Shown in pieces: positions 6,624 to 49,438 of a stretch of DNA of 64,000 nt. The notes beneath the pieces are model-generated. The model did no database searches. It had not been told where the DNA came from and worked only from the letters and a program-made list of their open reading frames with translations. Position 1 is the stretch's first letter. Each line of letters starts with the position of its first letter. The position numbers and the translations under genes are program-made. Source of the DNA: Monocercomonoides exilis PA203 (Eukaryota; Protista; Preaxostyla); the NCBI GenBank assembly GCA_001643675.2, contig LSRY02000040.1:372001-436000 (forward strand), written 5' to 3'.

Positions 6624-7229
6624 ATTTTCACTTCACAGGAAATAATCATTGAATCATTAAAGTGATAATTTTCATATTTTCATTTTTTTAAAAACACTGT
6701 TTATTATTTTAAATGGCTTATTTTTTTTTGAAAAGTGACATCAGATCAAAAATCTGACCTATGGAAGTTAAAAAATAATCATTCCGTTTCCATTATTCTC
6801 ATGAAAAACCAAACTTTCACCACAATGTTTGATGGTTCATTGCGGACTTCTTTATAAAAATAAAATTCAAAATTAAAAAAATTTGTTTTTCAAAGAAAAA
6901 GTGTTTCACTTGATTGAACCTTTTTGCAATTATTGACATATGAAATGTCCAAGGTGGGTTTTGATTCTATTTCCTGATAAACTTGATTTTCAATGTTAAA
7001 TATAATTTTCATTTGAATAGAATTTTTCTTTTGCAATATGAACATGAACTTTACAGAAATGCGAAAATTGAACACACATATTCTATGCATCTGAAATTAT
7101 GATAAATTAAGTGGTTTCCATAAAATTTTGACAAAAATATTTTATTTTTTATTTATTATTAAATAATGTTTTTTTAATTGAATCATTAACAGTTGATAAC
7201 CAACATTTGCGTTTTCAATTTCATTGTAG

Positions 7230-7876
7230 ACAAATATCTGAATTCAAGAGCAATATCAGGATATTGAAGCACAAGTTCAGAGAAAGGAGGATCGATAGCG
7301 TTATCAGAAGGTGAAGGAAATAAAGTGAAAGTTAAAGGAGGACATTCCGATGAGTGCCTTTGCTCAGCGACAAATGGTCTTGGGGAAGGAATCTTTCTTC
7401 GATTGATGAAAGAAAATACAAATTTCCTGATCTCCACTTCCTTTGGAACAAATACAGCCAAGTGGGGAAGAGATATCTTCGCCTTATCACCAAATCTGGA
7501 AATGACTGCAAAATCAAAAAAGATCTTGTATGTTACGGCATCGTCAGACACTGCTGACAAGGTGAGAGGATATGAGAATGGAAACAACAGTTTGGCTATC
7601 CCTCTGTGCATCTATCTCTTCAACCCAGAAGAAATCTTTGCGAGCAATTCTGAGGCATCCAATCATTCGCACTGTGGAATAGCTGAATTCCCTTGTTTGA
7701 CGATGAAGCACTCACTCACAAGACAAGCAGGAACAAAGAAAGTGGCTTTGAGTGGAATGATTATAATGAGTGACGAATTGGTTTTTGCTGATCGAAAGCA
7801 TGAAATTCGAAGAAATGTTGAACAAAGTGGTTTGATAGTCTCCGATGCAAGTTTCACATCAAATTTTGAGAGATAA
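7230..7876 (+). pseudogene. Fragment of a beta-helix/polymorphic surface-protein-like gene family
   Basis: ORF 7325-7876 has GRDIF and CGIAEFPCLT motifs that match GNDVF/CGRTQQMPCA (37478-39154) and GHDVY/CGMSESAPCKT (46168-47115). No proper start or end. Confidence 0.6.
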
Positions 7877-8279
7877 TTAAAGCAAATGATAAAAAAGTTT
7901 TATCAAAAATTATCTTCTCTCTTTTATCATTATCATTATTATTATTATTATCTTCTTCTTCTTCTTCTTCTTCTACATCTTCGTCTTTATCATCTCATTC
8001 ATCACCATCGAAATCAAAGCAAACAAAACAATCTTCTTCTGCATCGTATACTTCCCCTTCCTCCAATTTTTTCTCTATCGTTTTTTCTTCTGCTTCTTCT
8101 TCTTCTTCGTCTTCGTCTTCGTCTTCGTCTCATCTATCTTCTTCTTCTATTTCTCCTTCTCCTTCTCCTTCTTTCTTTTCAACAACTTCCTCCTTCACAC
8201 TCACAAGTGGCACTGTTATTGCGACCATGTTCTGAAAAGAAGAATTACCCTTTTTCAGATTATCTTTATCTCCATCTCC

Positions 8280-8671
8280 ACGCTAGCCTGTCACACACAA
8301 ACGTCTGTTTGCTTTTCTGCAAACGTAGATGCCACAAAATAATTAGCTTGTTTAACGCATGAACAGTCTCAAAAAAAAAAACAACTCTCATACACTCAAA
8401 TGCATCGCTACCCGCTTTATTTCTTTGACACCCAAACAGATACAGCGAATAAACCAGGAAGAAATGGTTTTGCACACTTTGAGCATAAAGAAAAGAGCCA
8501 CGCGTTGAAATTTGTTCTCTCGGAGTTCCTTCGTTAACTCTTCTTGCTGGAACGTCGCAACTTGTGTAGTCTCTACCTAATTTACGCACAAAGCAGAATT
8601 AGCAGAAGCGGATTCATATACAGACACAGAAGCACAAGTAGCTGCATCAGAAGAAGAAAAAGAAGAAAAAG

Positions 8672-8703
<32 letters not shown>

Positions 8704-10934
8704 GAGGGGGAAGAGGAAGAGAAAGAAGAAGAAAATAAAGAAAAAGAATAGAAAGAAGAAACAAAGTTATCTAGCACATTCTCTGCTTCCATCTTCAATG
8801 CCATGGGAATTCCAAACGAAACAACCACTGAGAAAGCATCGTCAGTTAAAAATGGTGAACGAAGCATCAATTCCGCATTCCCCTATCGTTTGGACACATC
8901 CGATTGTCTTCTTTGAATAAACAACTCTTTGATATCGAACCTCTTGTCAAACTTTTTGAAAGAATCGGCCTCCGATCCTTCTGCGCCTCTGCCTCCATTC
9001 ACTCACCCAGTCAAGTCAGCTGTGTATACGCATCAGACGCCCCATCAAACACACCCTCAAATGCATGCACTAAAAGCATCTCTGAACGATTGCTCGGCAT
9101 CTCCTTTTCATAACCTGCTTCAACTCCTTCTCTGCTCTGCCGTGCATCTTCAATTCCCTTCTCCGATATGAATTTCACCTTCACCGAATCATCTGTACTC
9201 CATCACAACAGACGCTGTCACTCCACAGCACAGTAGCCGCGATTTCATTACAATGTGCTCATTCGCAAGGTGGATCAGCTTATCCTGGCTGATAAAGATA
9301 CCACACACAAACTCGTACTCCTCTGCTTTGCGCTGGAACTATTCAACAAGGCCGTTAAACATAACCGCCAAGTCTTCCACAATCGCCTGCTTCATCCCTG
9401 CTTCACTCTATGTCCCATGCTGCATGAGTATCTCGCACAGCCTTAGAGTCAGATTTCTCTTCGGCTTTGTTCCTCAGCTGTATCTCCATCATTTCACCTG
9501 CATCTTAGCACAGCTTCATGACAGCGGCATGTTCAGCTAACTCAGCACATCAAAAGTCTACACGTCTGCAATGCGCGCACTCATCATTCGCTGATTGGTC
9601 AAGGTACTGCTCATCAGCGCTCGACCAGACAGAACAACTTCGTCGCTCCGTTCTTCAAAGTGTACTCAATCATTCCTCCCTTTTCCTCCCTCTTCCTCCT
9701 CTTCTTTCTCTTCTTCTTCTTATCATTCCTCATAAATCAAACGGCTTTCCCCACCTTTCTTCATGGGATATATCTTATTCCTCAATTATTGTCAAATGAT
9801 CAACTGATATTTCAACCTGTTCCAAACACTTCCTTCACTTCCATCTGAAATTGCTCCAAAAGACATATCTGTTGCTTCTTCTTCTGATGCTCTTCTGTTC
9901 TCCTGTTGAATGCCATCAGATGGAGAAGAACTGCACACTTCAGATTTCATTGGATGCTGCTTGCTTACACACACCTCAGTATCAGCCTTCACAAACCTCA
10001 ACCTACTCAGCCCAAGCGTCTCCACATTCAACTGCGCCATCACTTCTTCCGGCTTCCCCTGGTTCTTTTTGACTCTCTCCACAAACTCTCTGTGCGCTGC
10101 CGGATACCCGCCTTTCACTTCATTCACATCACCTTCCTCTGCCTCTTCCCGCTCCTCCAGCACCACCAGCACAATCTCCTCAGGCAACAGAACCACATCC
10201 TCCATCCTCAGCCCCGCTGCCGACAGCCCCTTCTCCACAATCTCCCCCACTTCACGCGCTGCAACCCCTCACGCCATCACTTCATAAACCAGTTCACCAC
10301 CAAATATTTCAACTGAGAAGATTACGATACCTGCCCCAACGGGTGAAACAGATCGTTGATAACTGTTACTCATTCACATCTTCAACCGATATGATCCGCT
10401 TGCTCCCAGACTTCTTTCTCACAGACACTGCTTGCGAAGGAAGCGACGTAAACAGCGCGACCAGCGGAACAGAAAGCATTGCCGAAAGCGCCACATCGTA
10501 GAAACACACAACACTCCCATGCAGCACAGCCCGCCGCGCCACAACATATCCCTTGAAGCGTCTGCAGCACCCGCGGCGATAGCAGCAGCTGCAGCGACAG
10601 CGGCATGTGCCGCCCATACACCCCAGCCGCCTCTGGCACCACAATCCGCAGCCACCTCTCGATATCGTCCATCACTCAGGTCGATGTGTATGACGCTGCC
10701 ACAGCCGACGCATCTGAAGGGTCAATCGCAGGTGCTGAAGAAGAAGAAGATAGCTTATCATCTCCTGTCACTTTCTTCTCTTCGCTTCTCCGCCTCTGGA
10801 ATGGAGAAGCAGACTGGCGTCCTTATCCAATTGAAAAAGATGAGGAAGACGAAGGTGCAATTCGAAGTCATAATTGCAGCAATGCATTAAAAACACAAGT
10901 CTTGATTCAGTTTCCAAAGAAGAAAGTGTTATAA
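8280..10934 (+). pseudogene. Degraded host-gene fragment(s), unidentified
   Basis: GC-richer coding-like sequence broken into short frameshifted ORFs, ending ...WNGEADWRPYPIE...KKKVL*. Confidence 0.45.
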
Positions 10935-11749
10935 GGTGAAAAAACAAATTGTTAACATACAATGAAGAACTGAACACATTTTATTTTTGAATTGTATTGA
11001 AATAAAATGTGATAGCTGAGGAATGAAAAGATTTAAAAGAAAACGAAAGAATCAAAGAACACTATTCATTATTAAACAATAAAAATGTAAAACATGTTTT
11101 TTTTTTTTGAACTTTTCATGATTACGCTTTTCTGTGTTTAATTTGTAGAAATGCCTCTTTATTTTATTAAAACATTTATTTGTTCTTAATGAGAACAACT
11201 GTTTGAATGGTTTTCTATTGTTGTGCATTTTGTTTTGATGTATTTCTGCTTTTTATCACTTTCTAAAAAAATAATATTGGAAGATAGATATTTATATCTA
11301 ATTTACTAATAGCAAAAAGAAATGTTAAAATATTGCTATTTCTCAAAATATAAAGACGTGAATTGAAACGAATGAAATGAAAACGAAGAAATATTAACAC
11401 ATTATTTATTTAATTTTAATATCTCGAAAGCAGTAGATTACAGAAGTGTATTCTATTAAATAATAAGTTTTCTATATGTTATCATCAAATTTATGAAACG
11501 TTTCTCAGTGATAAGGGTAATATATAGCAATAGATAATATTATTTAAACAATAATGGGAACGGAATGATCAACATTTTTTGATCATTTTAGATCTCTTTT
11601 TCAGATCAGTTAAACGATTGCGACTTTTCAAAAAGAATGACTCATATATCAAACAACAATGGTGACAGAATGATCAAAATATTCTGATTGTTAGTGGTCT
11701 TTTGTGAAGACAAAATTAAAGGCATAGAAGTTTTCAAAAAAAAAAAAGA

Positions 11750-13100: not shown

Positions 13101-13352
13101 AAACGAAAGTCTTCAAGTGTTTTCTTTCCCAAATCAATGAATCTGATGGTTATTCTTTCAAATCCTTTTTGATCGAAGTTTTTGCGTATTAAAAAATCCA
13201 AATACATTTATTGTTAATAAAAAATTTGCAACAGCATACTTTATATGTGGGAAAATATTAGACTTCGAACTTTTTCATTGGAAATAATGCTCTTTTAATA
13301 AGCTTTTTATGATCAATAAATCGAAATTAATTACAACCATTTTCAGAAACTA

Positions 13353-22084: not shown

Positions 22085-23301
22085 CTAACACGAACATTTT
22101 CATAAGCCCGGATATTTTTTCATTGTTGAAACAGAATACATATAACATAAATATATAAAAAACAAACTTATAATTGTAAATTTTTCAATACTTTGTACGG
22201 ACAAATATTTTTTGTTTCAATTTTGGTTTATGATGAAGATCAAAGGAATTTCTCATTTTTTTTTGTTCATTTGTTTTGCTCGTTTTATTCCAACTCTCTT
22301 TCTTTGTTTATTTTTAATTACAAAGTCAAAAACATACATAATAAAATTTTGTTATTACAAATATTTTATGGTTTTATCTATTTTTTTCTATTGTTTTTCA
22401 AATTTCATATTTTTCATCATGAATGTTGAAAAAATGAAAATTATGAGCTGTTATTCATTTTGATGAATTATTTAAAACAATTTCTTGCAAATATGATTGA
22501 AAAGATTTTGAGTTATTCATAATAAGTCATTTCTTATTTAATTGAAAACAAAATAAGCATTTTTATTATTTTCAAAAATTGAATAATGTTATGAAAGAAG
22601 CAACATTTAACAAATTTTTTTATACGGAAAATATTTAATTCAAATCTTTATCTTTTCATGCACATTATTTCTCATATGAAAAATATATTGAACAGGTCAT
22701 AATTTTGATTTTTTCAACATTCATGATGAAAAATATGAAATTTGAAAAACAATAGAAAAAAATAGATAAAACCATAAAATATTTGTAATAACAAAATTTT
22801 ATTATGTATGTTTTTGACTTTGTAATTAAAAATAAACAAAGAAAGAGAGTTGGAATAAAACGAGCAAAACAAATGAACAAAAAAAAATGAGAAATTCCTT
22901 TGATCTTCATCATAAACCAAAATTGAAACAAAAAATATTTGTCCGTACAAAGTATTGAAAAATTTACAATTATAAGTTTGTTTTTTATATATTTTTGGAA
23001 TATATGGGTATCTCTTTTTGAAAAGTCGCAAATGTTTAATTTTCAAATAAATTTGAAAATTCATATTTTGCTAAATTTTTGTTGGCATTCACCAAACTCT
23101 TCTAATACGGAATCTATTTCTTGATAATGCCATTTCATTCATTCTGAAGAAATTTCGTGAGTGGAAACATTAATTTGAGTAAACCATGAAAAATTTGATT
23201 TATAAGAAAATTAAACATTTGCGACTTTTCGAAAATAATCACCCAGAAATTCTGTTTCAACAATGAAATAATATACGGGCTTATGAAAATGTTTGTGTTA
23301 A
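22085..23301. mobile_element. Long-TIR MITE flanked by TA/TATA, its left TIR interrupted by a foldback element
   Basis: CTAACACGAACATTTTCATAAGCCCG at 22085 is inverted to CGGGCTTATGAAAATGTTTGTGTTAA at 23276-23301; the rest of the left TIR resumes at 22998-23070, inverted to 23175-23250. Confidence 0.75.
22146..22997. mobile_element. Foldback (Mutator-like) element with about 300-bp near-perfect inverted arms
   Basis: 22146-22452 is the reverse complement of 22691-22997, which explains the mirror-image ORFs 22212-22463(+) and 22665-22931(-); spacer about 240 bp. Confidence 0.92.
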
Positions 23302-24029: not shown

Positions 24030-24269
24030 TAGGTCTCTGCGACAGACCGACATTTTCAAAACAACTCGACGACTCGACCGACAATTTTGTCGAGTTTTTA
24101 TTTTTTGGTAATAAAAAAATTTAAAAAATAAAATTTTATTTTTTAAAATTAAAAATGAAATAAAATTTTTTTCAATATTTTTTTATCTGTAAATATTTAT
24201 AATTTGAAAAGGAAATGAATAATCATAATATTTTCTTTTTTTTCTGAAATTCTATTAATAATAATGGGT

Positions 24270-24340
24270 TATCGACAGTTCTTTGTCGAGATCAGTCGAA
24301 CGACAAAGATCAGTCGTTTGACAAAGATCAGTCGAGTTGT
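24270..24340. repeat. Subterminal tandem repeat GACAAAGATCAGTCG of the large hAT-type element
   Basis: Two full copies and one partial copy, plus scattered CGAC motifs at 24040-24095. Confidence 0.75.
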
Positions 24341-24545
24341 AAGATATGACTAAAAATAAATGATTTTTTAACAATTGTCAATTATTTTATTTTTATTTTG
24401 AGACTTTCTCTCACTTAAAGATTTCATTTTTTTTAATTTTTTAATCATGTTTGCTTTGATTTCTTATTTTGAAGTTCAATGATTTGGTTAAATTTTATAG
24501 CAAATGTTGCATTGCACAAACAAGGCTTTTTAATTATTATTTATA

Positions 24546-30060: not shown

Positions 30061-30395
30061 AATATGAGAAGAAGAGAAACAAATAAAAGAAGAAGAGGAA
30101 AAAGATGATGATGATAAAATAAAAGAAGAAAAAACCGAAAAGGGGTTTAAGAAAAAGTTATTTAAAGAAGTTTCTTTTTATTTTTCTTCTTCTTCTCCTT
30201 CTTTCACACAAAAAACAATACAACAAAAGAAAAAAAGATAAATATTCATTTTCTTTACCGTTTTGAAGAAAATGATGAAGATGAATTAAAAAGCGTTAGC
30301 TTCTTAATTCTCGAGAACAAATGAAAATACAACTCCTCTTTCTATATGGGATAGAGCTCCGTTTAATGGGGTCAGCCGATCAATAATTATTAACA

Positions 30396-31397
30396 ATGAG
30401 CGTGCTTCAGCCTGGACTCGAGTCGAGTCTGAATTTTTTATCTCAGGATATCAGCGGACCTCCGAGCAGCGTGGGATTTACGCAATCCACCTCCAGCATA
30501 TTTTCCTCATCAGCCGCTTCTATTCCAACACAAAATATTGCAATGGGCCTTGAAAACACATCAAGCCGAGAAGATCACAATGTTACAAACTTGCTCCATC
30601 CACATTTCCAACAATCTTCTAGCTCTTCTCAGTCCCAAATATTCCCAAGTCCAACAACACTTGAGAGACACCCAATCCATTCTCCGCAAACGACGCAGCA
30701 GCAGAATATTCTTCAAACGATAGACACTTCGCAAGAACATCTGATGGAGAAAGACAATTATCAACCGAACTTCAAGAATATTTGTCTCTCGCTTTTCGGG
30801 GATTAAACAAAGGATTCAATATTCGAAATGCATTTTCATGAACAAGCAGGCTCAAATTCCACAATTTACTCGAATTCATCAGCACCTCCGTTCATTCCAG
30901 AGGCTATCCACCCGATTCAAAGAACATCAAATTGGTGCTACGACGCTCTAGAACAAAATGGATTCAAAATCGAAGAAAAACTGCTATGGGCAATAAAAGC
31001 GCTAATTATTGGAAAAGATATGGTGGATAAGGGATTGGACCCAAGTGCAGTTTTGGCTGATTCTTTCTTAATGATGGTCAAAGCACTCTAGGAAGCGAGA
31101 ACACAAAGGATCCAAGCAGTTTATGGGTTCAGAGCCGCAAGAACATTAAAAGAAGAGGATGGAGATTAATTGCTGTCCAAGAGGAAACTTGAAACGCTGA
31201 AGATCGCTGAGCCGAAACAAAAACTGCTTTCTCGATCGCAGGGATGGGTCAAACCAAAAACAATTATATTCTCACTTAAAAACCAGTTTTTTCTGTCTAG
31301 AAGGATCCCATTTACAAGAAGAAAATTCAGTTCAAACAGCCGCAGAAGCTCCAAGAGAACCAGCAGAACTTGGAGCTCCAACCAATGGGATCCTTGA
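30396..31397 (+). pseudogene. DIRS gag-like ORF1 with in-frame stops
   Basis: Same-frame segments 30396-30806, 30828-31091 and 31170-31397 upstream of RT; similar to 61610-62047. Confidence 0.7.
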
Positions 31398-33292
31398 AGA
31401 AAGTTGGAGAAAGAACAAGACTCTTTCTCAAGAACTGGTCCGAAATAGGGGCCCGGAGAATTGTGGAGAAGGGGGCTTGTCCTGTTTGGAGAAGCAGAGA
31501 GGTACGGAACAAGCTGAAAAAGGAAGTCAAAGCAGGACATGGTTTTATTGGATCCCAGGAGCAGGAGAGGGAGTGCGAGAAGTGGAGAACGGAAGCACTG
31601 GATTGTGGAATATTGAAGAGGGTCAAGTTCGAAGATGCAAAATGCCTGAGCAAACTGTTTTCCGTAAAGAAGAAGAACGGGAAATGGAGACAAATATTGG
31701 ACTGCAGACCTCTGAACAAAGCCCTGAAATCAATCAAGTTCAAGCTGGAGGATCACAGAACTGTGGAAAAGTTGATGGAGAAGTGAGATTTTACAACCTC
31801 GTTGGATCTCTCTCAAGCATATTTCTTAATCCCTGTTCGCGAAGATTTCATCCCGTTTTTGGCTTTCAAATTTCATCAAGAAACAATAGCTTTTCAATGA
31901 CTCACATTTGGAATGAAGAATGCTCCAAGAATCTTCACTAAGATCATGCGTTCAATTAAAAAGCTAGTGAGAATGAAATGGAAGGTTCGTTGCATTTCTA
32001 GTCTGGATGTTTCGTTTTTGTGCATGGACATCCAAAAGCTGGAGCATTAAACAAAAGATGTTCTGGATTGGTTTTTCCAACTTGGTCTGATGGTCAACAA
32101 GGAGAAAAGCGAACTTCAGGCAAAGCAAAGATTCAACTTTCTGGGATGGAAATGGGATTCGATTCAGTCGACAGTGGCTCTGAACGAAGAGAGAATTGCC
32201 TCCATTGTTCAGAAGTGTTGCATTGTGCTGATAAACACAATGAAGAGACGTCCAATCTCAGTCAGAAAGTTTGCTTCAATTGAAGGACAAATATGCGCTG
32301 CCAAATTTGTCCACGCAGACGCTTCATTACACATGACAAACCTTTATCAATGCCTAATGAAGAAAGTCAACATCAATGGATGGAACGGACTATGTCGACT
32401 TCATGATGGAATCATTCCAGAATTGACATTCTGGATAAGCGAAGTTAGGAAGAGAAAACAAAGAACGCTTCAATCCTTTGGCTTCACTCAGGTGACGATT
32501 TCAATAGATGCCTCACAGTGGGCATGCAGAGGAAGTCTAAAAATAGCAGGACAACGCAAGAAGATTTTTCACGTCCCTTTGAACAGAGTAGCTCAGAACC
32601 AAACATCAAACAACAGGGAATTACTAGCAGTCAAAATTGCGCTAGCAAGGTTTTCTCAGGGTATCGCAAAACTGTCGGAAAGGAATGTATTGATACGCTC
32701 AGACAACATATCGGTAGTTTACAACATAAACAGATGGGGAGCAGGAAAGAATCTGCGACCTCTGTTGAAAGAGATCAGGAAACTTGTTGAGAGACAGGGA
32801 ATCCAGGTCAAAGCAGTTCATATTGCATGAAAAAGAAATGTGGAGGCAGATGCCCTGTCAAGACTCGAGCAGTCGGGAGATCACGAAATCAAAAATCAGG
32901 CTCTTCAGATGGAACTCAGCAGCCTCAGGATCAAACCGACTCTGGATGCGTTTACCAGTGCAAAGAACAGAAAGCTTCAACGGTGGTGCGGGCCAGGCAG
33001 CAGATTATGTCAGGACGGTCTGAACTATCCGTGGAAGGGCGAGGTGGTTCTTGCCCATCCGCCAATTCCACTGATCCTTCATACGATGAGGAAAGCGATG
33101 AAGGAGAGAGCGAAGATGATTCTTCTGATACCGGATTGGACGAATCAGATTTGGAGTCAGACCCTTCAACTGTGGAAAAGACGATTCATGAGATGGAGAT
33201 GTTCACGAATGATAGTACTTCCAGGGCAGGGTCTGAAGGCGAGAGTAGCAGCGCTTCCTCCGGGAGGTTTCCTGGCAATAAGCTTTCCCTAG
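31370..33292 (+). pseudogene. DIRS pol: reverse transcriptase, RNase H and adenine-methyltransferase-like domain
   Basis: KKKNGKWRQILDCRPLN, LDLSQAY, FGMKNAPRIF, FLGWKWDS, IDAS, NNRELLA, IRSDN, ADALSR, LDAF...HPP...PDW; stops at 31786 and 32830 plus a frameshift. Confidence 0.92.
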
Positions 33293-34916
33293 TCAAGAAG
33301 GCGGGTGAACAGTGGTTTGAGCAGTACCTTCAAAAACTTAATGTTCCGGACAGCATGATAATACACATTAAAAATAGTGTTGCCACGTCAACATGGACAA
33401 CTTCCACATTTGGATTCGCACATTTCGCTAACGCTTGGATCAAGGGGAATATGGGGGAGTTACCGTCAGGTCCTGTGATTTGGGTGAGGAAGTGCTTGGA
33501 CACTTTCATTTGCTTAGATAATAAGGGTTTTCCTCCTCAATGCTAAAAGCAAACAAGGTCTACAGTGTCGCAATTCACTAGAAGTGCTTTCTCTTTCGAT
33601 TTAGGAACAGTGCCGATGATAAAGACATTCTTTCGCTTTATCATGAGAAAGGAAAAGAATAGAGCTCCGTACGAGGAAATATGGGATCCACAGGTCCTTT
33701 TCAATTATCTCCGAACTCTGTATCCCAACGAGACTTTGAGCGGGAACTCTCTGACATTGAAATCTATAACTCTGTGTATGTTATTCACTGCATGCAGGTT
33801 TTCAGAACAAGCGAGCATTTCAATGAACAATTCGATAATCTCTGAGAATGTAATTCATCTTTCAGTCCAATTGAAAACAAGACTCGCAAGATCGTTCATC
33901 ACAGTCCCCAAACTGATGGAGATCCTGTCAAATATATACCCAGTGCGTGCAACATTGGAACTTTGGAACAAAATTAAAGTTTTGTATCCAGGAAGATACA
34001 CGTTCATAATAAACACGAGAACCTGATCAAAAATGTCCAAGGATGGAATTCGTAAACTCGCAAAGGAGGCAATGAAGCAGGCAGGAATCAACCCCTCGTT
34101 TCGGCCTTACACTATAAAGCATGCGGCTTTGTCTGCTCTCGTTGCGGTGGAGTTCCGGAGGTAATGGTTACAAACTTTGCAAGATTGTCACCCACAGCTC
34201 ACACACCAACTGATTCTTTCTTCAAAACAAACACTGCTCAAGTGATGGCCCAGGTTCTGACAGTACACCAACCATTCCCACAAACAGGATCTCAAATACA
34301 ACCTTGGAGTGCACAAATATCTCTCGGATCTGCTTCCGCAAACATCCAGACGTTGAGCCAATCTGCAATTGACATATCTCCTGTTCAACATAATATCATC
34401 GTGCCAACTCAACAACAATCTCAGATCTTTAATCTTCAGCCTTCCTTTCAGTATCTTCAATGAAAACAACCTTCAAATTCAATTGGATTATCGCTGGCGC
34501 AACCACAAACTTTCAATTCCCCGCAACTATCTTTTCAGACAAATTGTTCCATTCCAACACAACTGCTTCCCTCTCTCACAGAACAGAGCATTGACGTGTA
34601 CATCGAAGAGTCGCAATCATCGCGGACCGTTGGAGAGGAGATGGATATCAATAAGGAAAATGAAGAAGTCAAAGAAGTTGAAGATAAACTGCATAATAAG
34701 GAAAATATTTGCATGGATCAGGAAGAGGAATCGATGCGATCATGTTCCCCTGCAACTGTCAAGAAATCAAGAAATATTTGCACACGAACAGAGAGAGAAG
34801 CAACAAGAGCCTTGCAATATAAATGGAAGAGGAGACACAAAACATGCCCAATTAATGATATCCCAAACAGAAAGAGGAGTTGTATTTTCATTTGTTCTCG
34901 AGAATTAAGAAGCTAA
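33290..34916 (+). pseudogene. DIRS tyrosine recombinase ORF with Gln/Ser-rich tail
   Basis: ACRFSE (Arg), KT (Lys), YTIKHA (HxxR box variant); stops at 33546, 34026 and 34463 and a frameshift near 34147. Confidence 0.88.
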
Positions 34917-34965
34917 AGCTTTTTAATACGTTAGAGAACTAATTTATATACGACTCCTCTTTTCC
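34860..34965 (+). repeat. DIRS internal complementary region (ICR)
   Basis: GAAAGAGGAGTTGTATTTTCATTTGTTCTCGAGAATTAAGAAGCTAA is the reverse complement of the left end; the adjacent CGTTAGAGAACTAATT is the reverse complement of the right end. Confidence 0.93.
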
Positions 34966-35964
34966 CTCCACAAAGCGAAGCTTTTCCCACCCAGGGAACT
35001 TACAGTTAAAAAAACTTTTTCTTACACATTGAAAGTCTTCGTGTTTTGTGGTTATAAATGAAAGATATAACTCCTTAGTGTAAACTTGCACAGCCTTTTA
35101 TTGGACGCAAACTTTTTAATTCTTTTTAACTTTTTCATCACATCAGCAAACACCACAAATCTCACGTCACATTGATCGGCTGAGCCCATAAAACGGAGCT
35201 CTATCCCAAATAGAAAGAGGAGTTGTTTATTAATTAGTTCTCTAACGAAATAAAATTCCTTTCAAAAACGATCGCAAAGTATACGAAAGTTCATTTTCTT
35301 CAGATTTTTCCGAGGAAATGTTTGAGATGCAAATGAATGAAGATTTGAGGAGGAGGAGAGCTGGGAGAATCGGGTTGGAGGAGGAAGAGGAGAAGAAGAA
35401 GAAGGCATTTGCGATATGAAAGATGGTGTTGCGGAGTGCAATGTTAAATGCTGTGATGAAATGATATGAAATTGAAATTGAGTGTCAATGGAAGATAGCT
35501 GTGTTGAAGCGGGCGGAAGCAAAGGAACTGGTGAAATGGAAAAGGAGGAAGAAGAAGAAGATGAATAGAATAATTCTTATTCATGAGTTATTTTTCTTCG
35601 AGCATTTAAAAAAACAACGTTAAAATTATCTCCATTAATCAAATCCACATCAGCAGCAGAGACATTTCAAAAAACTTCCATTCCAAATCATTGTATTTTA
35701 TAAAAAGCAACAATCATTTTGATTCCTTTCATATTTCTTCTCCAGTTTTTTCAGAAATTTCTCATTTGTTTTCAAAACACAATATATATTGTTATAATGG
35801 TAAATAAAAAAAAGCAGCTGAAACAAAAAGTTTTTGTTGAGATAAGTTGGATATTTTCATGTGAAGCAATGTTTGTGAAGAAACAATCATTTCAATTTTT
35901 TCGACAAATGAAAAATTTCTCGACAGACAAATTGAACTCAAAAAATGTGTGTCGCAGAGGCCTA

Positions 35965-36679: not shown

Positions 36680-39600
36680 TAGATACAATGCAGATTAAAT
36701 TGGATCATTTGAATTAATAGAGGTTTTTTTAATAACCCTATGTTAATTTGAATAAAGACCACTTAATTCAAATAAAAGGCCAAAAATTAAAAATCAACAA
36801 GAGATTTTGAATTTGAAAAGATCATTCAAATTAATAACAATTGTGGGAAGTGAAAATAAAACAAACAAAAAACACTGAAAAAATAAATGTGGAAATAAAA
36901 GAAAAATTGAACCTTTTTTGACAGTCTTATTAATCAAACCTCGATAATTCTATGGAAGCGTGTTAACATACTTATATAAAATAAATGTTAAATAAATAAT
37001 TTGTCAATAAAGTGAAATTATAATTTGTTTTCAGTTTTGCGTGAAAAATGATTCGCTTCGAAGAAAATTTTTATAGTTTTTGCATAAATAATAAAAAGAA
37101 AACAACATAATTCTGACAATTATATGAGAAAAATATTTTTCCCGCTAACATTTCATTAAACTGTAAATATTTTCACCACAAGCATTGCACAGCGATGTTG
37201 AAGTTGTGGAATCAAAGGCTAATTTCTTTTGCTTTTATCATTTCCTCAATTTCATTAAATTCTGTCGATCATGTTTTTTTCTGATGTTTCTATTTCAAAT
37301 ATAAAAAATGATCTTTCTCTTTTTCTTTCTTAAAAAAACTCCCTCTTTCTTTTCATCTTGAAAGTCATCTTTATTTTCGTTATCATTTCTCTCTTCATTT
37401 TCAAACCACTACCCCGTAAAATATCTTATGCCAACTTCTTTGAAAAGAAGTACATTTTCTTCCTTTCGCCTTTGCATCTATTTTAAGAAGCATCCCACAT
37501 TCTCTGTAATTTTTTCCTCTTTTATTTTCTTGATGTCCGTTTTCCTTTCGCTCACACAGCAGCTGGAGAAGGTGGTGTTGCTCACTGAAAACGAATTGGC
37601 AGGGGCAGATGAGGCGAATGAGATGCACCCGCCATCTGTGGCAGTCTGTTGGTTTTGTGGAGCTGAGTTGATGTTGGTGATGGTGCAGTTGGAGAGGGAG
37701 AGGGAGAGAGCAGGGGAGGTGGCAGAAGAGAGGACACAGCTGGTGGGGGTGGCAGTGGAGGTGATGTGGGTGATGTTGGAGGAGTTGAGAGTGAGTGGAG
37801 CGGTGAGGGAGGTGAGGTGGAAGATGCTTTGGCTGTTGAGGGCGAGACTGGTGATTGCTGTGTGGTTGAGGGCGAGGGAGCCAGCAGTGAGGAAGAAGAG
37901 GGGGGTTGTGATTGTTATGGAGGTTGTTCCGGTGATGGTGGTTGTGTTGAGTTTGAGGGAAGGGGAGTTACCGGAGAGGTGGAAGAGGATGGGGGTGATT
38001 TGGTTTGTGGAGTTGTGGGTGATGGCGAGGGCAGAGACTGTGAGGGAGCCCTGAGTCTGTTGGAAGAGGGCAGACGAGGCAGATGGATCTGGTGAAGAAG
38101 ATGTTGATGAAGGAAATGAAGAAGAAGAAGAAGAAGCTGGTTGAGGAATTCCACTGGAGGCGATGATGGTGGCATCTGTGCCATTTCCTGCAATTTTAGT
38201 ATTTGTGAAACAGATCGTGAGTGTCTGAGCTGGAGTGAAAGTTGAGAGGAGGATAGAAAGGGAGGCGATTTGGAGGGGGATGAAGCCGTTGAGGGCATAC
38301 TCTATTATGGCGCATGGCATTTGCTGCGTTCTGCCACAGGCACTGACATCAGTTCCGTTGTTTCCAACGATTTTGCTGTTTGCAATGAGAGGAAGCCAGC
38401 TGTTGACAGTTTCATTGGATGCTGTGTTGTTGAGAAAGATTCTGTTTGCTTGGGTTGTTGAGCCACAATTATCAAATGGAGATTGTGTGATGGAATCACC
38501 ATTGAAAAAGACATCGTTTCCTCTTCCATCAGTTGCGAAATTGCCATCGAAAAAGCAGAACGTGATGAATTTTATTCCATTTATCCAGGAAAAAGTTGCT
38601 GTGCAGCACAGCGCAGCACCATCATTGGAAGTTGAAGTTGATGTCAATTTATTGTTTATGAACTGGCAATCATTAACCAAAAATTGATTTGGCTTATTAG
38701 TTGGAGGATAATTAAATGTGAGAGAACCAGCAGAATCGTTACCAGAATTTGAGATGCACTTGCATTTGGAAAACAAGAATTGACCGTTTGATGGCAAAGA
38801 ATATATATGGAAATACCAGCCAGTTCCGCACCAATTTGTTATTGAACAACTTTCCACTCTGTTTTCAGAGAATGTCCAAACAGAATTAGTTTGCGGATAC
38901 CTGATGCAATTTGCTCCTCCATGAGCAGCTGAACAATTTGTAATATTGGATTTTGTGATATTCTCATTTTGCAAACAGTAACTGTATAACGCTCCACCAT
39001 GATCACCAGTTGAACAATTGTTAATTGAGCAAGATGTGATTTCGAGATTTGCATTTGCACAATTAACATAAAGTGCGCCACCAGATGAACCATTTCCAGA
39101 ATTATTCCATATGCACCATTCAAAGCGATGACTGTTTTCATCAAATGAAGCCAATCTTCCTGGTGTTTCTCGTTGAGATTCTGTTCCAATATGAACAACA
39201 GGAGCATTTGGTGAAGAGCGTGTTTGGTGGAGAAAGAAGTGTTAAAGACAGGATAAAAGTGTCGGAACTGTTGACAGAAGAGACAATAGAACAGTTGATG
39301 GTGTTTTGAGTGGGTTGGAAGAGATAACTGAAGAAAAGGACGAGAGAGAATAAATTGTGTGATCATAGAAATAAAATATCTGTTTGCAAGTAATTCTGAG
39401 GATAAAAATACTTCAAATTTTTGATCATCCACATATGAAAGGCTTTCTGTGCTTTAGGTACGAAAGAAAATTGTGAAATAGGATAAATAAGAAGAAAAAT
39501 ATCGAAAAAGAAATTTTTGTAAAAAATATTAAAAGATCTATATTTAAAACGAAATCTTGAAAAAGAAACGTATATACCTTTTAACATTCATCGTTATATC

Positions 39601-40197
39601 TATTTCATGCAAATGATTAAAGGTATTGTTCATCAACAAGGCGAAAAATGAAAAACAATTTTGTTTGAAAATTGCTGTTGCTAAAAACGAAAAAAGCAGT
39701 AATTACCAATGAGGACTGAGCATAATGGCACAGAAGTTATCGTTGGTGCTAAAGTATTAAAGAAACAGCTTGCAATTGCGAAGAAATAAACAAAAAATTT
39801 GATGAAGCTTTTATGATTTGTACATTGGGAAAAATGAATTTTTAATTGTTAAAACCATGCATACTTATGTTATAAAGCTCACGTTTTCGATCACATAAGT
39901 TAAAATAGCATTTTAAACGAATTATCGAATTATTATATTTTTTCGAAGTTGATTATTGAAAGATCAAATTTTTTTCTAAAAGAAAACCAAAATTAACTTC
40001 AGTATTTTTTATAAATCTTTTCTGTTTATTATTTAATATTATTCTTTTTCAAGTTTAAAACATTCAATTCAAAATCGCATGTGTATTTTAAAAATAAGCC
40101 AGTCAATTTAAATAAACAGGGGTTTTTTTAAATAACCCCCACAATTTTGAATTTTTTTTTCAGTTTGAATTATGTGATCCAATCTGCATTGTATCTA
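36680..40197. mobile_element. 3.5 kb TIR element without transposase, carrying a surface-protein gene fragment
   Basis: Perfect 17-bp inverted ends TAGATACAATGCAGATT / AATCTGCATTGTATCTA, extended by TTGGATCA/TGATCCAA; similar GGTTTTTTT(A)AATAACCC motif at 36722 and 40121. Confidence 0.78.
37478..39366 (-). pseudogene. Secreted beta-helix (pectin-lyase-like/polymorphic membrane-protein-like) gene, frameshifted and 3'-truncated
   Basis: 558-codon ORF with GGALY/HGGA repeats, CFFDGN, GNDVF and CG...PC; signal-peptide-like start at 39366 reached only through frameshifts; composition breaks at about 37545. Confidence 0.72.
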
Positions 40198-40559
40198 TTA
40201 AAGTCTTGTTATAAGTTTAATTATCAATCAACATAATCAATCTCTCTGAGATAAAAATCTTTGATCAAACCTATCATTATCTTTTATCATGTTTTCCGAT
40301 AGGTATTTTTTTTCCTTATGTGTCATTCTTTTTGAAAAGTCGCAGAAGATCAAAAAATCGTCCCATCGCAGTTTATTTAATAACACTCCGTTTCCATTTT
40401 TTTATTATTCAACGTATTTATCTTATAACGTTTGTTGGATAATAAATAATCAATTCATAGAAAAAGATTTATCCTTCAAAAAAAATATTTAATATTTTTT
40501 TGATCAAATTGAAATTTAATTTTCCAGAGAAATTGAATTCGTTGTTTGAGGAACGTTTT

Positions 40560-45400: not shown

Positions 45401-46167
45401 ATGTGATATGCTTTCTATTGTCTTTAATTGTTAATATAAATGAAATAAAATATATTAAATTTTTATATATATTCTTTCAGATAATATAATTATTTAAAAA
45501 AACCACAAAAAGAAATAAGACATGGGACAATTTCTGCATTTCTGAAAAATTCAATTATTTGTTCAAAACATTTACTCCAATCTTATCATTAGATGGTATT
45601 GGAATAAGAAAATTTTATTGAAATAAAAATAATAATTCGAATAACCAAAGTTTATTCCAGATAACACCAGTTTATTCGAATTAAAAAAATTTATTCCAGA
45701 AAGACCAAGTTTATTCCAATTAATCCCTCAACAAAAATTTTAATGATCCTTTTTATCAATACGAATGTGCTGAAAAATGAGAATACTTAAAGAAAAAATA
45801 AACAATATTTATTCATGGAAATTCAATTCTGAAAATAATGTCTGACAGTTATGGTACAAAATTAAAAAATGACTATCTGAAAATTTGTTCCAAAGGATTG
45901 GAGATCGAATGAAATTACATGAAATACTTCAAATCGAAAAGGCTGTATTTTCGAAATTATGAATACGGTACGTTAACATGCAAAATTGGCTGAATATTAC
46001 TCAATGAAGGAAAAAGAGGTAATTAAAGAGGAAATGAAAAGAAATCAGTTAATTATTTGAAGAACATATTTACAGATTTGAGAAAAAATCAAACATTCAA
46101 AGCAGATTATGAAAAAGCTTTTCCTCTAGAGAGATTTCAGATTTTTGAATTTGAATAGGAACGGAAA

Positions 46168-46930
46168 ATGGCAAAGGGGAGAACACACGTATATGAGTGC
46201 TCATTCATTTCGTGTTCTCTTACAAATACTGTTGGCGGAGGGATGTATTGTGCTAATGTTCCGGCTGCATTCAAGATGAGGAGCCTCCAGTTTATTTCGT
46301 GCACAGCAGTGTCGAATGGCGGAGGAATGAGATTTGATCCAAACCAACAAATAGCTCCAAGCAACAACATTTATTGCTATTTCTTCTTCTTCCACGATTG
46401 CAGTTGCAACGCTTCCACTCCGTATGGCCACGATGTGTATTTTGAAGATCGATACAATTTCTTCTCATCGAACAACCCATTCTACGAATCTTATACAACG
46501 AATAGCAATGATACGAGAGTGTGCCTCCAATATTATAACGGAAGCAGTTGGAAATATCAGCATACAGAAAAGAAGTTTTGGTTAAAGGACTGGATGAAGG
46601 ATCGGTATGTTGGGGTGGGTGGAAGTGACGCAAACAATCTGTGTGGGATGAGTGAGTCAGCACCTTGCAAGACCGTGGGACATGCAGTGGTGACAAGTTT
46701 GGTGGAACTGAGCTCGACAATCACAGTGTTTGGTAGGAGGCATGTGAGCGAAGTGACAACAATCAGCGCTGGGGAAAAGAAGATTTCTGTTGTTGGGAGA
46801 GGGAAAACGGTGAGTGTGATTGGGACAAGTGCGCTTTCTTCGTCTGCAACTACTCTGTTTAGCGTATCTTCTGGTAAACTTGAGGCGGGGCATGCCTGGA
46901 TCGATCACAACTCTATCAGAAGTCCATCGC
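46168..46930 (+). pseudogene. Internal fragment of a beta-helix surface-protein family gene
   Basis: GGGMY, NGGGM, FFFHDC, GHDVY, CGMSESAPCKTVGHA; the sequence changes character after HNSIRSPS. Confidence 0.72.
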
Positions 46931-47189
46931 AAAAAATGTTTGCGGAATCACTCTGGAAACAGCAGGAAACATGCAGCAATCGAGCTCAGCTTTTATGTTC
47001 ATCTCCAATCTACCATTTTCCTCATTTGTGCAGCATTCTCTCATCCTCTGCCATCTGCTCAGCCTCGCTCAGATTTCGTGAACAGGACAAGACAGACACT
47101 GCTTTCAGCGGCTAAAGATGGAGAATCTGGTTTTACTCAGTCCCAGCAGATTTCTATGTTGTCGTCGAAATCGCACTGCTCCTCCCCCG

Positions 47190-47285
47190 CCTCCTCGCCT
47201 TATTCTTCTCCTTCTCCTTCTCCTTCTTCTCCTTCTCCTTCTTCTCCTTCTCCTTCTTCTCCTTCTCCTTCTTCTCCTTCTTCAA
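47190..47285. repeat. 15-bp tandem repeat (CCTTCTCCTTCTTCT) encoding EGEEG on the minus strand
   Basis: Visible periodic repeat inside ORF 47200-47487. Confidence 0.85.
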
Positions 47286-47739
47286 CATCTTCCTCTTTTT
47301 CTCCTTCTTCTTTTTCTTCTGCTGCTTCTTCATCTTCGTATTTTACTTCTTCTGCGATTTGCCCTTTTCCACCAACTGCCCCATCTTCAACTTCGTCATT
47401 GTCTTCTTCATCAATTCCTTCTCCAACTTTTTCGATGCCATTATCACTTTCTTTGCATTGGATCGGTATATCAACCTTCTGATTCATAAAAGCTGTTCAA
47501 TTGGAAGCACTGACAAATTGAACAAAATATTAATTCATTCACTTTTTATTCTCTCAACATCGTCATAATCATTATCAATGCCTTTAATTTGTTTTGTAAA
47601 AAATGCTTTAGAACTGCTTTCCTCTTCTGCAGTGGCGCATTTCGCTCTGTTTCAGATCTTCGAACAACTTCAGCGCTCTGGCTGTGCTGAAAGGAGTGAA
47701 TGAGGTGAATGGGGGTATCACAAGAAATGGCAATGGAAG

Positions 47740-48549
47740 ATGGAAGGAGCTGTTAGGCTCATTACGTTCATCCACAAGCTTTGTTTCACTCCGAGAAGTG
47801 AAGAGAGAGGAGCGCGTGTTCAGGAAGATGAGGCAAAGAAAGCAGAGTACAATTGCAAGATGAATGCTGTGCAGAGGAAAGGGAAGCAGTATGAAGAGCC
47901 AAAGGTTAAGACGAAGAAGAAGGAGAAAGACGAGTTTTGCACATCTCAAATTGACGCTTTTGACACAAGGCTTGCACAGGCAGCAACAGAAAGGAGGAGG
48001 AGGGACAGGGGAAGAGAAGAACGAGGTAATGATAAAGATGAACAGCAGCAGATATCCTGCTCATTCGACAGCTCACTCTCATCTGCCCAGCTGCACACTC
48101 AAAACATCACAGCCTCCTCAACATTTGCTTCTCCTCCTTTTTCTCCCTTGCCACACGTCGAATTTTCTGTCACTTCTGTTCTTGTTGGAACCCCGCCGAA
48201 GCCTCTCACTCAGTCATCTCCTGCCACAGACTCTTCTTCAGTCTCACAGGAGTTCAACTGCACATCTCTCCCAAGCTCTGCCTCTTCGTCGAACATGCCT
48301 CCTTCCTCCTCTCCTACATTTTCCTCCTCTAACAATTCATTCATTGGGCTCTATGATTCTCGAAATGCAACAGCCAATAGAAGTTCTAAGAATCTGCAAA
48401 AATTTTGGAAACTGCAGATAACAGATGATCAGGAGAATTTATTCCCTTTGTGCAAATGTAATAACTCAAAAACAACAAAAACATCATTATCTGAAACTGA
48501 TAGAGTTTTTAGTGGAGGGGTGAACAACAAACATAATCAAGTATCTTGA
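47740..48549 (+). pseudogene. Ser-rich hypothetical gene fragment
   Basis: 269-codon ORF preceded by coding-like sequence with a stop; lies inside the 45590-49071 element. Confidence 0.4.
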
Positions 48550-49438
48550 ATGATTTCATCGAAATATTTAACCTTTTGCGATTAGATATTGTTTTTGGTC
48601 TTTTTTCCTGATTGATCATAAATGTGAAGAGAAGATAGAAAAAAGAAACAAAAAAGAATTAACAAACATTGCGAAATGATAAATTATAATTTATTGCTTA
48701 CTGTAAGTCTATTTTTGATTGCTTTTATTAGTTGCAAATTGAAGAATATTTTATTTCATCATTCATTTTTAATAACATTTCAAAAATTTCTAATCGTAAT
48801 GCATTTAAACAAAATCTTGCTAATTAAATAGTTTTTTCCAAAATATAAGTGGAATTAATTAACATGTAAATGCTTTTTAAGAATGTGATTTTAGTGAATT
48901 ATTTTTGAAAACCACAATAAATTTTCGATGAAAAAAGTTATTCCGAAAAGCCAGAGTTTATTCCAATTAATTTTTTTTATTCCAATAAAAATAATTAATT
49001 CCGAATAAATTTTGCTTATTTGAATAAGTTATTATTAATCGAATAAAACCTTTCTATTCTCATTGTATCTATTATAAGTCTTCTATTTTAATGCAAAAAA
49101 ATACGGAAAATTCTATATTTGAGAAAAATATTTGTTAAAGAAAAATGGAACATAATTCAGAAAGCAATAAGTTTCGTCCCAATTTATTCCTTTATCAAAA
49201 TTTTTTGTTGGTTAGATCAAAAAGAAACAAAAGATTTCCATTTCTGGCCTTATACAGCCAATCCTTGAGGCTTCTTCGCAATATCTTTAACACTTCTTTT
49301 TATATAACAAACATTAAACAGTGCGTATTACGATCGTTTTTGTGCTGCAAAATAATCAACGATGTTTGTATTTATCTTTTATTTTGTTATTTGCCCAGCT
49401 TTGCCCTTCTTTTTGAATGTTTTTTTATAACAAGCAGA

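What the first reader, a model, noticed from the sequence alone, without database searches (positions are those of the whole stretch)
6625..49071. Recurring 'Pack'-type DNA transposons carrying and fusing host-gene fragments
Seen: at least three, possibly five, TIR-bounded units lack a transposase of their own and enclose broken host-gene pieces (24030-35964, 36680-40197, 45590-49071; tentatively 6630-11712 and a unit starting near 40250). Three contain pieces of the same beta-helix surface-protein family joined abruptly to unrelated sequence. Known: Pack-MULEs and Pack-CACTA/hAT elements capture and shuffle gene fragments in plants. Inference: several TIR superfamilies here act as a gene-capture and exon-shuffling system that could explain the expanded surface-protein and pseudogene families. 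I know of no such description for this lineage.
Basis: partly seen in the sequence, partly recalled or inferred. Interest (0 to 1): 0.85.

Follow-up and report, generated by a model that had tools for sequence, protein, structure and literature searches.

The report
Gene-fragment-carrying DNA transposons in an oxymonad
This stretch of the Monocercomonoides exilis genome holds at least three families of transposase-less, inverted-repeat-bounded DNA transposons that each picked up a piece of a host gene and then multiplied, a kind of element known from plants and animals but apparently not yet described in this group of protists.

Summary
The observation largely holds. By its metrics and protein names the genome is M. 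exilis PA203.

- **Unit B (36680-40197):** TA-flanked, with a perfect 17-nt TIR. About 17 TIR pairs lie 3-4 kb apart genome-wide. It carries a 1.78-kb internal fragment (aa 333-894) of a 3035-aa receptor-kinase-like gene whose ectodomain models as a beta-helix.
- **Unit C (45590-49071):** a second TA-flanked family. It carries the homologous ectodomain region of a sister gene subfamily.
- **Unit A (24030-35964):** a hAT-like element with an 8-bp duplication. A pogo-like and a DIRS-like element are nested inside it. Its 4.5-kb core carries about 80% of a gene that is intact at one other locus.
- **Unit D:** TIR-bounded, but at 6714-11644. Its TIR is shared with an abundant MITE.
- **"Unit E":** only a left end was found.

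Each family shows one capture followed by amplification. The copies then decay. B copies are mosaics that exchanged cargo with host paralogues.

The wider inference fails. These elements hold only a few percent of the surface-gene family copies. No new functional gene, autonomous partner or empty site was shown.

This is a new member of the known Pack-TIR kind. First-stage notes flag at least 8 similar, unchecked candidates elsewhere in this genome.

The parts
36680..40197 (.). Unit B: non-autonomous TA-flanked TIR element, 3518 bp. Perfect 17-nt TIRs. TA at 36680-36681 and 40196-40197.
   Evidence: At least 13 full copies with unrelated flanks. 78 TIR hits against 0 for the control. No ORF of 90 aa or more in the arms. 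The 558-aa ORF has no Pfam match.
37548..39322 (-). B cargo: internal fragment (aa 333-894) of a giant receptor-kinase-like gene. It reads through the 3' junction into about 23 element-derived codons (ORF 37478-39154).
   Evidence: Identical breakpoints against 8 gene loci. 72% aa identity to the L024 ORF. L024 has a C-terminal PK_Tyr_Ser-Thr domain. AlphaFold model pLDDT 63 overall and 80-90 over residues 10-130. The best PDB fold matches are all parallel beta-helices.
45590..49071 (.). Unit C: second non-autonomous TA-flanked TIR family, 3482 bp. Its right end begins TAGATACAATGAG; its left end begins TAGATGGTATTGG.
   Evidence: Six further full copies have identical 30-nt termini and unrelated flanks.
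46152..46953 (+). C cargo: internal fragment of large uncharacterized M. exilis surface proteins. It equals aa 399-648 of MONOS_14295.
   Evidence: 428 candidates, mostly on contigs C42 and C80. (74.5% aa identity to MONOS_14295; 67% to the 2062-aa MONOS_3094). MONOS_9722 carries a kinase domain.
24030..35964 (.). Unit A: hAT-like non-autonomous element. The core is about 4.5 kb and holds two nested insertions. TIR TAGGyCTCTGCGACA. Flanking 8-mers lie at 24022-24029 and 35965-35972 (6/8 alike).
   Evidence: The 8-bp duplication is perfect in copy L030 and 7/8 in L029. No Pfam transposase in 10 ORFs from four copies.
27852..29848 (-). A cargo: about 80% of a two-exon gene for an acidic low-complexity protein, including its start codon. 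The fragment is truncated 143 codons before the end of the gene.
   Evidence: It matches L033 (C25:2520592-2522737). L033 lacks the TIRs and arms and has intact 425-aa and 359-aa ORFs. Element copies carry 0-10 stops in the 425-codon frame and 0-3 in the second exon, plus gaps.
24542..27055 (+). Nested pogo-like autonomous element inside A. It has an intact 444-aa DDE_1 ORF at 25285-26619, is TA-flanked, and its TIR begins TACAATGAGTAAAAAACCC.
   Evidence: (copies up to 97% identical).
30284..35255 (+). Nested 5-kb DIRS-like retroelement inside A.
   Evidence: at least 8 copies at 92-93% identity with internal inverted terminal repeats; weak Phage_integrase and RVT_3 hits.
6714..11644 (.). Unit D: 4.9-kb unit bounded by an inverted pair of the motif CTTTTTGAAAAGTCGCA (6724-6740 on +, 11619-11635 on -). 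It holds degenerate surface-protein-like sequence. No target-site duplication was seen.
   Evidence: (at least 25 collinear paralogues ending at 6722-6725 and 11645-11653).
23005..23245 (.). MITE of about 240 bp with the same terminal motif as D.
   Evidence: There are 434 exact 17-mers in the genome against 0 for the control, and many pairs lie about 207 bp apart.
40319..40344 (+). Lone left terminus of the D/MITE type.
   Evidence: 75% identity over 77 nt to D's left end; no full-length copies of 40198-45589.

Best explanation
The region is a transposon-rich patch of the M. exilis genome. It contains at least three families of Pack-type elements, meaning non-autonomous TIR transposons that carry a host-gene fragment.

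How each family arose:
- A fragment of a host gene was joined once into a transposase-less TIR element.
- The likely mechanism, inferred by analogy with published Pack-TIR models, is template switching during repair or replication of the element.
- B took a 1.78-kb piece of a giant receptor-kinase-like ectodomain. C took the homologous piece of a sister subfamily. A took the 5' 80% of an acidic-protein gene.

What happened next:
- The chimeric element was moved in trans. B and C were moved by a TA-duplicating transposase (Tc1/mariner/pogo type). A was moved by an 8-bp-duplicating transposase (hAT type).
- The families amplified to roughly 20-25 (B), about 10 (C) and about 8 (A) copies at unrelated sites.
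- The cargo is not kept intact in the elements and accumulates stops and frameshifts.
- In B, copies also recombine with each other and with the several hundred host paralogues. Elements with nearly identical arms can therefore carry very different cargo alleles.

Shown: the TIRs, the duplications, the copy families, the sharp shared junctions, the intact parental-type genes, the decay in elements and the mosaicism.
Inferred: the capture mechanism, which transposase moves them, and gene conversion as the source of the mosaicism.
For: Mobility:
- Paired conserved termini with unrelated flanks and TA (B; C), or with an 8-bp duplication (A).

No transposase:
-.

Host origin:
- B cargo equals aa 333-894 of an intact 3035-aa ORF with a kinase domain.
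- 8/8 gene loci are open over about 590 codons with 0 stops. Only 3/14 element copies are stop-free; the rest have 1-4 stops.
- C cargo equals aa 399-648 of MONOS_14295 and its relatives.
- A cargo: L033 is intact, while element copies carry 0-10 stops in the first ORF frame plus gaps.

Single capture:
- Both B junctions are identical in all copies.

Mosaicism:
- Segment-wise distances between B copies are uncorrelated, r about 0-0.4.
- The window copy and L001 differ by 2-7% in most of both arms (11% in one inner arm segment) but by 27-31% in the cargo N-part.
- Element and gene cargos interleave in trees. AU tests reject element monophyly, p = 0.015 for the N-part and p = 0.00035 for the C-part.
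- dN/dS is about 0.25-0.3 between divergent cargos. Most of that divergence therefore arose under protein-level constraint, that is, in genes.

Possible mobiliser:
- The intact pogo-like element in the window shares the 10-mer ATACAATGAG at its tip with C's right end, and TACAATG with B. Five of the eight ATACAATG sites in the window are element termini.
Against: - No autonomous partner with matching TIRs was identified.
- No empty site, orthologous or paralogous, was shown (searches were inconclusive).
- For A, the 'parent' L033 and all its relatives are M. exilis-only proteins of unknown function. L033 could be a rearranged element remnant rather than a bona fide host gene, although its ORFs are intact and run past the cargo breakpoint.
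- Three of 14 B copies and three of 7 C copies keep fully open cargo frames. Short RNA contigs also match B's cargo and a short element-specific tail at 37413-37510. Some copies may therefore be expressed or functional.
- The assembly is ONT-based, so some frameshifts may be errors.
Confidence: 0.8

Rival explanations
1. The element-borne ORFs are working passenger genes. On this view the elements are vehicles that spread truncated, secreted or decoy ectodomain genes kept by selection, not decaying captured fragments.
For: dN/dS is 0.2-0.6 in all B cargo comparisons, including the two closest element-element pairs (0.56 and 0.38). Three of 14 B copies and three of 7 C copies have fully open frames. 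The in-frame element-derived tail is similar across copies. RNA contigs match the B cargo exactly at 38148-38306 and match the element-specific tail at 37413-37510.
Against: Most copies carry 1-5 stops or frameshifts, while 8/8 gene copies have none. The B cargo is an internal fragment with no evident start codon or signal peptide. The arms, including the would-be promoter side at 39324-40197, have no RNA contig cover. The low dN/dS can be inherited from host genes through conversion.
Confidence: 0.1
2. The different cargo alleles in B copies come from repeated independent captures of different paralogues, not from recombination after a single capture.
For: Element cargos are as far from each other as from host genes and are not monophyletic.
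Against: All copies share both junctions to the nucleotide. The arms themselves are mosaic, including element-only segments, which repeated capture cannot produce.
Confidence: 0.05
3. These are not transposons. They are ordinary dispersed or segmentally duplicated members of large gene families whose shared ends merely look like TIRs.
For: L007 and L008 are the same locus duplicated in inverted orientation. For unit D no target-site duplication could be seen, and its content is a whole family-wide 4.9-kb block.
Against: The 17-mer TIR is absent from the reversed control and is paired at a constant 3.5 kb. The termini are far better conserved than the interiors. TA or 8-bp direct repeats sit exactly at the ends, with unrelated flanks in at least 13, 6 and 4 copies.
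Confidence: 0.03
4. The mosaic and pseudogene signals are artefacts of a long-read assembly, such as collapsed or chimeric repeats and homopolymer errors.
For: The assembly is ONT-based and was then polished. Frameshifts are a known residual error.
Against: The cargo alleles differ by 27-31% over more than 1 kb while keeping codon-level conservation. Stops are substitutions in a fixed frame, not only indels. Gene copies in the same assembly are clean.
Confidence: 0.02

Closest known systems
Pack-TIRs of animals (Pack-hAT, Pack-TcMariner; Tan et al. 2021, PMC8277862)
   Same: Non-TE host sequence sits between the TIRs of hAT or Tc1/mariner-type elements. Junctions are sharp, some are transcribed, and template switching is the proposed origin.
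   Different: In animals the captures are small (median 224 bp) and almost always single-copy; only 4 of 370 are multicopy. Here the cargo is 0.8-2 kb of coding sequence and each family has about 8-25 transposed copies. In B there is also later exchange of cargo with host paralogues.
Pack-MULE / Pack-CACTA ('Pack-TYPE') elements of plants (PMC8903248, PMC6379663)
   Same: Non-autonomous, TIR-bounded, multicopy and carrying gene fragments. They inflate gene annotations with pseudogene-like models.
   Different: The superfamilies differ: TA and 8-bp duplications here, against 9-11 bp for MULE and 3 bp for CACTA. No element here was shown to combine fragments of several genes, which is typical of Pack-MULEs. 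The host is a protist.
Ssk-FB4 of Drosophila melanogaster (PMC8277862)
   Same: A multicopy Pack-TIR family that carries coding sequence and may be functional.
   Different: Ssk-FB4 carries a whole small gene and is supported by peptides. Here the cargos are truncated internal or 5' fragments, most copies are broken, and no product was shown.
Silent donor cassettes of surface-protein families that act through segmental gene conversion (my own knowledge; nothing was tested on them here)
   Same: Truncated, promoter-less copies of the variable ectodomain of a large surface-protein family show mosaic exchange with full-length genes.
   Different: No expression site, no direction of transfer and no phenotype are known here. 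The copies are inside transposons. This is a resemblance only.

Membership tests
Pack-type (Pack-TIR) non-autonomous DNA transposon | Terminal inverted repeats at both ends | tested here: met
   B: 17/17 nt. C: conserved termini and roughly 95-nt imperfect inverted ends. A: 14/15 nt.
Pack-type (Pack-TIR) non-autonomous DNA transposon | Target-site duplication and copies at unrelated loci | tested here: met
   TA in 13 B copies and 6 C copies. An 8-bp duplication in A-family copies: 8/8, 7/8, 6/8, and one copy without.
Pack-type (Pack-TIR) non-autonomous DNA transposon | No transposase gene of its own | tested here: met
   No Pfam transposase in the B, C or A-core ORFs. B's arms have no ORF of 90 aa or more. 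The DDE_1 ORF inside A belongs to a separately bounded nested pogo-like element.
Pack-type (Pack-TIR) non-autonomous DNA transposon | Internal sequence derived from a host gene whose intact copy lies elsewhere, joined at sharp breakpoints | tested here: met
   B. A: although the parent is species-specific and of unknown function. C: shown at protein level only.
Pack-type (Pack-TIR) non-autonomous DNA transposon | An autonomous element with matching TIRs that can mobilise it | tested here: inconclusive
   Only a 10-nt tip match between C's right end and the intact pogo-like element. The larger B-TIR pairs could not be read.
Tc1/mariner/pogo (ITm) superfamily (units B and C) | TA target-site duplication | tested here: met
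Tc1/mariner/pogo (ITm) superfamily (units B and C) | Mobilised by a DD(E/D) ITm transposase | not testable with these tools
   This needs a transposition assay or a matched autonomous copy.
hAT superfamily (unit A) | 8-bp duplication and short TIRs starting YARNG | tested here: met
   The TIR starts TAGGC/TAGGT. The 8-bp duplication is CTATTCAT in L030.
hAT superfamily (unit A) | Related autonomous element encoding a hAT transposase (BED finger, hAT dimerisation domain) | not tested
Right-handed parallel beta-helix fold (B cargo) | Stacked three-strand coils; structural match to known beta-helices | tested here: met
   Model pLDDT is 80-90 over residues 10-130, with regular short strands. The top 12 PDB matches are PL6 alginate lyases (E down to 1e-5, probability up to 0.99), followed by tailspikes, pectin esterases and autotransporters. 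TM-scores are low (about 0.2), so support is moderate.
Receptor-type protein kinase (parent of B cargo) | Kinase catalytic domain | tested here: met
   PK_Tyr_Ser-Thr scores 41.7 bits against a cut-off of 23.1 at aa 2860-2955 of the L024 ORF. Only the C-lobe part of the profile (163-257 of 258) is matched. P0022 shows the same.
Unit D as a TIR transposon of the MITE's family | Shared TIR with target-site duplication | tested here: inconclusive
   The TIR motif is shared and paired, and the family ends coincide with it. No duplication was recognisable, and the other copies could not be read.

The most novel reading that the evidence does not exclude
The transposon-borne ectodomain fragments may not be mere debris. 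They could form a mobile reservoir of variable-domain cassettes that exchange sequence with the several hundred giant receptor-kinase-like surface genes by segmental gene conversion. Transposition would then seed donor cassettes around the genome and help diversify the cell-surface repertoire of this gut-dwelling protist.
Probability: 0.12. Interest if true: 0.8.

Novelty: new member of a known kind. Interest (0 to 1): 0.5.

Why it matters
The published M. exilis assembly leaves 35% of the genome as 'unclassified repeats'. The authors noted that these overlap the huge protein-tyrosine-kinase family, and they guessed the repeats were just gene families.

This work shows that part of that overlap is real transposon biology. 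Multicopy non-autonomous elements have captured kinase-receptor ectodomain pieces and other gene fragments, and some are annotated as genes (MONOS_5781, MONOS_9315).

- It extends Pack-type capture to Metamonada.
- It adds TA-duplicating elements with unusually large, amplified coding cargo.
- It gives concrete families for improving repeat and gene annotation.
- It offers a tractable case of exchange between transposon-borne fragments and their parent gene family.

Tried and rejected
1. The unpaired TIR-like hits AAGATACAATGCAGATT (15 sites) were tested as possible ends of an autonomous partner. Thirteen are internal to another repeat of at least 1.5 kb, with conserved sequence on both sides, so they are not termini.
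2. Homology between the B and C arms, which would indicate a common ancestral element, was tested. Only Ser-codon low-complexity matches and a terminal hit no better than shuffles were found.
3. A paralogous empty site for A was sought by searching both flanks. The left flank has about 9 copies and the right flank about 186 candidates, but no locus showed them adjacent. Only 40 candidates were scored, so this is inconclusive.
5. Pfam scans of A-core ORFs in four copies, of D and E ORFs, and of the C second ORF gave nothing above the cut-offs.
6. RNA evidence is limited to short assembled contigs, which lie only on the cargo. The heavy cover of 37596-38171 is the segment that is about 90% conserved with host genes, so it does not show that this copy is transcribed. 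No joint or junction-spanning contig was seen on the 5' side.
7. The look-up of encoding contigs does not serve this genome.
The large B-TIR pairs (5-16 kb), the C42 host genes and the other D copies were therefore never read.
9. A consensus of the A core was built locally only to look for ORFs.


Full report
**Source of the window**

- The window is contig C37:372001-436000 of an 82,301,135-bp assembly in 101 contigs.
- These figures, and a contig of 1,379,369 bp, equal the published size and N50 of the Monocercomonoides exilis PA203 Nanopore assembly (PMC8767320).
- Proteins matching window and related ORFs are named M. exilis.
- That paper reports 46% repeats. Of the assembly, 35% is 'unclassified', often overlapping the large protein-tyrosine-kinase family.

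**Unit B (36680-40197)**

Ends and copies:
- Both ends carry the same 17-mer, TAGATACAATGCAGATT.
- The whole 3518 bp recurs end to end at 77-85% identity at 15 or more loci.
- The 17-mer occurs 78 times at up to 1 mismatch (39 forward, 39 reverse), against 0 for the reversed control. About 17 pairs lie 3.0-4.2 kb apart.
- In 13 fetched copies the ends are in register, the flanks are unrelated, and TA stands on both sides. One pair of loci is a segmental duplicate.

Cargo:
- A block of 1775 bp (B 869-2643, window 37548-39322) also occurs without the arms at many loci, always with the same two breakpoints.
- Those loci are copies of a gene of about 9 kb. One copy (L024) has an intact 3035-aa ORF with a C-terminal PK_Tyr_Ser-Thr domain.
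- The cargo equals aa 333-894 of that ORF at 72% identity.
- The cargo ORF has GGA-type repeats. It models as regular short strands with pLDDT 80-90 over the first ~130 residues. Its best PDB matches are all parallel beta-helices.
- The arms hold no ORF of 90 aa or more, and the ORF has no Pfam match.

**Decay and mosaicism in B**

- Over 564 codons, all 8 gene loci have no stop, and they are open over about 590 codons.
- Of 14 element copies, 3 are clean and 11 have 1-4 stops.
- Conservation along the element is uneven. Termini are 87-89% identical, a cargo C-part is about 88-93%, and a cargo N-part is 65-73%.
- Between element cargos, dN/dS is about 0.25 and dS is 0.7-1.1 in the N-part, against dS of about 0.2 in the C-part.
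- Pairwise distances in different segments are almost uncorrelated. The window copy and L001 differ by 2% and 4-7% across most of the arms (11% in one inner arm segment), but by 27-31% in the N-part.
- Element and gene cargos interleave in trees. AU tests reject a single element clade, p = 0.015 for the N-part and p = 0.00035 for the C-part.
- Both junctions are identical in all copies. I therefore read this as one capture followed by recombination among elements and with host paralogues.
- The window's N-part has no relative closer than 79% among 565 candidates.

**Unit C (45590-49071)**

- Six further full copies (76-85% identity) have identical 30-nt termini, unrelated flanks and TA on both sides.
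- The right end begins TAGATACAATGAG, so it is related to B's end. The arms are not detectably homologous to B's.
- About 800 bp (46152-46953) match 428 candidates, mostly on contigs C42 and C80, at 80-85% identity.
- The 315-aa ORF aligns to internal parts of long M. exilis proteins. These are aa 399-648 of MONOS_14295 (74.5%), aa 394-650 of the 2062-aa MONOS_3094, and aa 486-741 of the 2728-aa kinase-bearing MONOS_9722.
- B's cargo aligns to the same part of these proteins at 21-24%.
- MONOS_9722 is 38% identical to the L024 ORF over 1924 aa.
- B and C therefore carry homologous ectodomain regions of two subfamilies.
- Three of 7 C copies are stop-free in the cargo frame.

**Unit A (24030-35964)**

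- The TIR is TAGGyCTCTGCGACA, with an 8-bp duplication. It is CTATTCAT in L030, 7/8 in L029 and 6/8 here. This is hAT-like.
- Two nested elements account for 7.5 kb of the unit:
  - a TA-flanked pogo-like element (24542-27055) with an intact 444-aa DDE_1 ORF and copies up to 97% identical;
  - a DIRS-like element (30284-35255) with copies at 92-93%.
- Removing them leaves a core of about 4.5 kb, present collinearly in at least 6 copies.
- No transposase domain was found in 10 ORFs from four copies.
- Core positions 3823-5819 (window 27852-29848) match one locus, L033, that lacks the TIRs and arms. L033 has intact ORFs of 425 and 359 aa on one strand, separated by 133 bp.
- Homology starts 85 bp upstream of the ATG and stops 143 codons before the end of the second ORF.
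- Element copies carry 0-10 stops in the 425-codon frame and 0-3 in the second exon, plus gaps.
- Relatives of this protein are M. exilis-only. Two of the annotated genes, MONOS_5781 and MONOS_9315, are encoded on A-family copies (99-100% identity).

**Units D and E**

- An inverted pair of CTTTTTGAAAAGTCGCA (6724-6740 and 11619-11635) bounds 6714-11644. These ends coincide with the sharp ends of at least 25 collinear paralogous copies.
- The same motif occurs exactly 434 times in the genome against 0 for the control. Many pairs lie about 207 bp apart, which is a MITE family; one member sits at 23005-23245.
- D contains a weak match to the surface-protein modules. It has no Pfam domain and no visible duplication.
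- At about 40319 there is a lone left end of this type. The stretch 40198-45589 has no full-length copies.

**RNA**

- Four metatranscriptome runs from one study hold short contigs. These lie only on 37308-39323 and none lies on the arms.
- Most cover falls on the segment shared with host genes.
- A few exact contigs in the variable part, and at 37413-37510 (the element-specific tail), hint at low-level transcription of B-type copies. Contigs cannot prove this.

**What is known**

- Pack-MULE and Pack-CACTA elements in plants and Pack-TIRs in animals are established.
- In animals 87% are hAT or TcMariner. The median capture is 224 bp, and only 4 of 370 are multicopy.
- I found no description for oxymonads.
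- The elements here fit the kind. They stand out for large coding cargo, real amplification and later exchange with the parent family.

**Limits**

- No autonomous partner and no empty site were shown.
- Host loci for C and D were not read.

Noticed in passing
window 24542-27055: Pogo-like element with an intact 444-aa DDE_1 ORF and genomic copies up to 97% identical, so probably recently active. Its tip shares ATACAATGAG with unit C's right end.
   Followed up: partly
window 11754-13186 and 33426-34858: 1433-nt inverted repeat at 95% identity. The second arm lies in the DIRS-like element nested in unit A. The first arm is a separate DIRS-like fragment just right of unit D. Both give weak Phage_integrase hits.
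   Followed up: partly
window 22140-23003: Near-perfect palindrome (313-nt arms, 98% complementary, 238-nt spacer) that abuts the left end of the MITE at 23005.
   Followed up: no
window 49225-53598 and 62564-63893: Set of inverted and direct repeats at 72-87% identity (0.2-0.8 kb pieces) forming a large imperfect palindrome, with a third copy 10.7 kb away. They contain ORFs of 160-280 aa with no Pfam match.
   Followed up: no
window 44388-44570: Unit of about 170 bp that recurs in tandem-like arrays at many loci in the genome (78-83% identity). This looks like a dispersed satellite.
   Followed up: no
window 55662-56855: 397-aa ORF with a full-length Acyl_transf_3 domain (E = 1e-26), a family common in bacteria. 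Its origin was not examined.
   Followed up: no
L040-L054 (e.g. G000:C17:367614, C25:128211): The 17-mer AAGATACAATGCAGATT, one mismatch from B's TIR, lies inside another repeat family of at least 1.5 kb (about 80% identity, conserved on both sides). Two of these sites lie 3-4 kb upstream of giant receptor-kinase-like genes.
   Followed up: partly
G000:C16:1225254-1232170: A B-type TIR pair 6.9 kb apart encloses two B cargo copies in opposite orientation. This may be a head-to-head double element. It could not be fetched.
   Followed up: no
L030, L031 (G000 contigs C1, C8): The NCBI gene models MONOS_9315 and MONOS_5781 are encoded on copies of the hAT-like Pack element, so they are transposon cargo annotated as genes.
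   Followed up: yes
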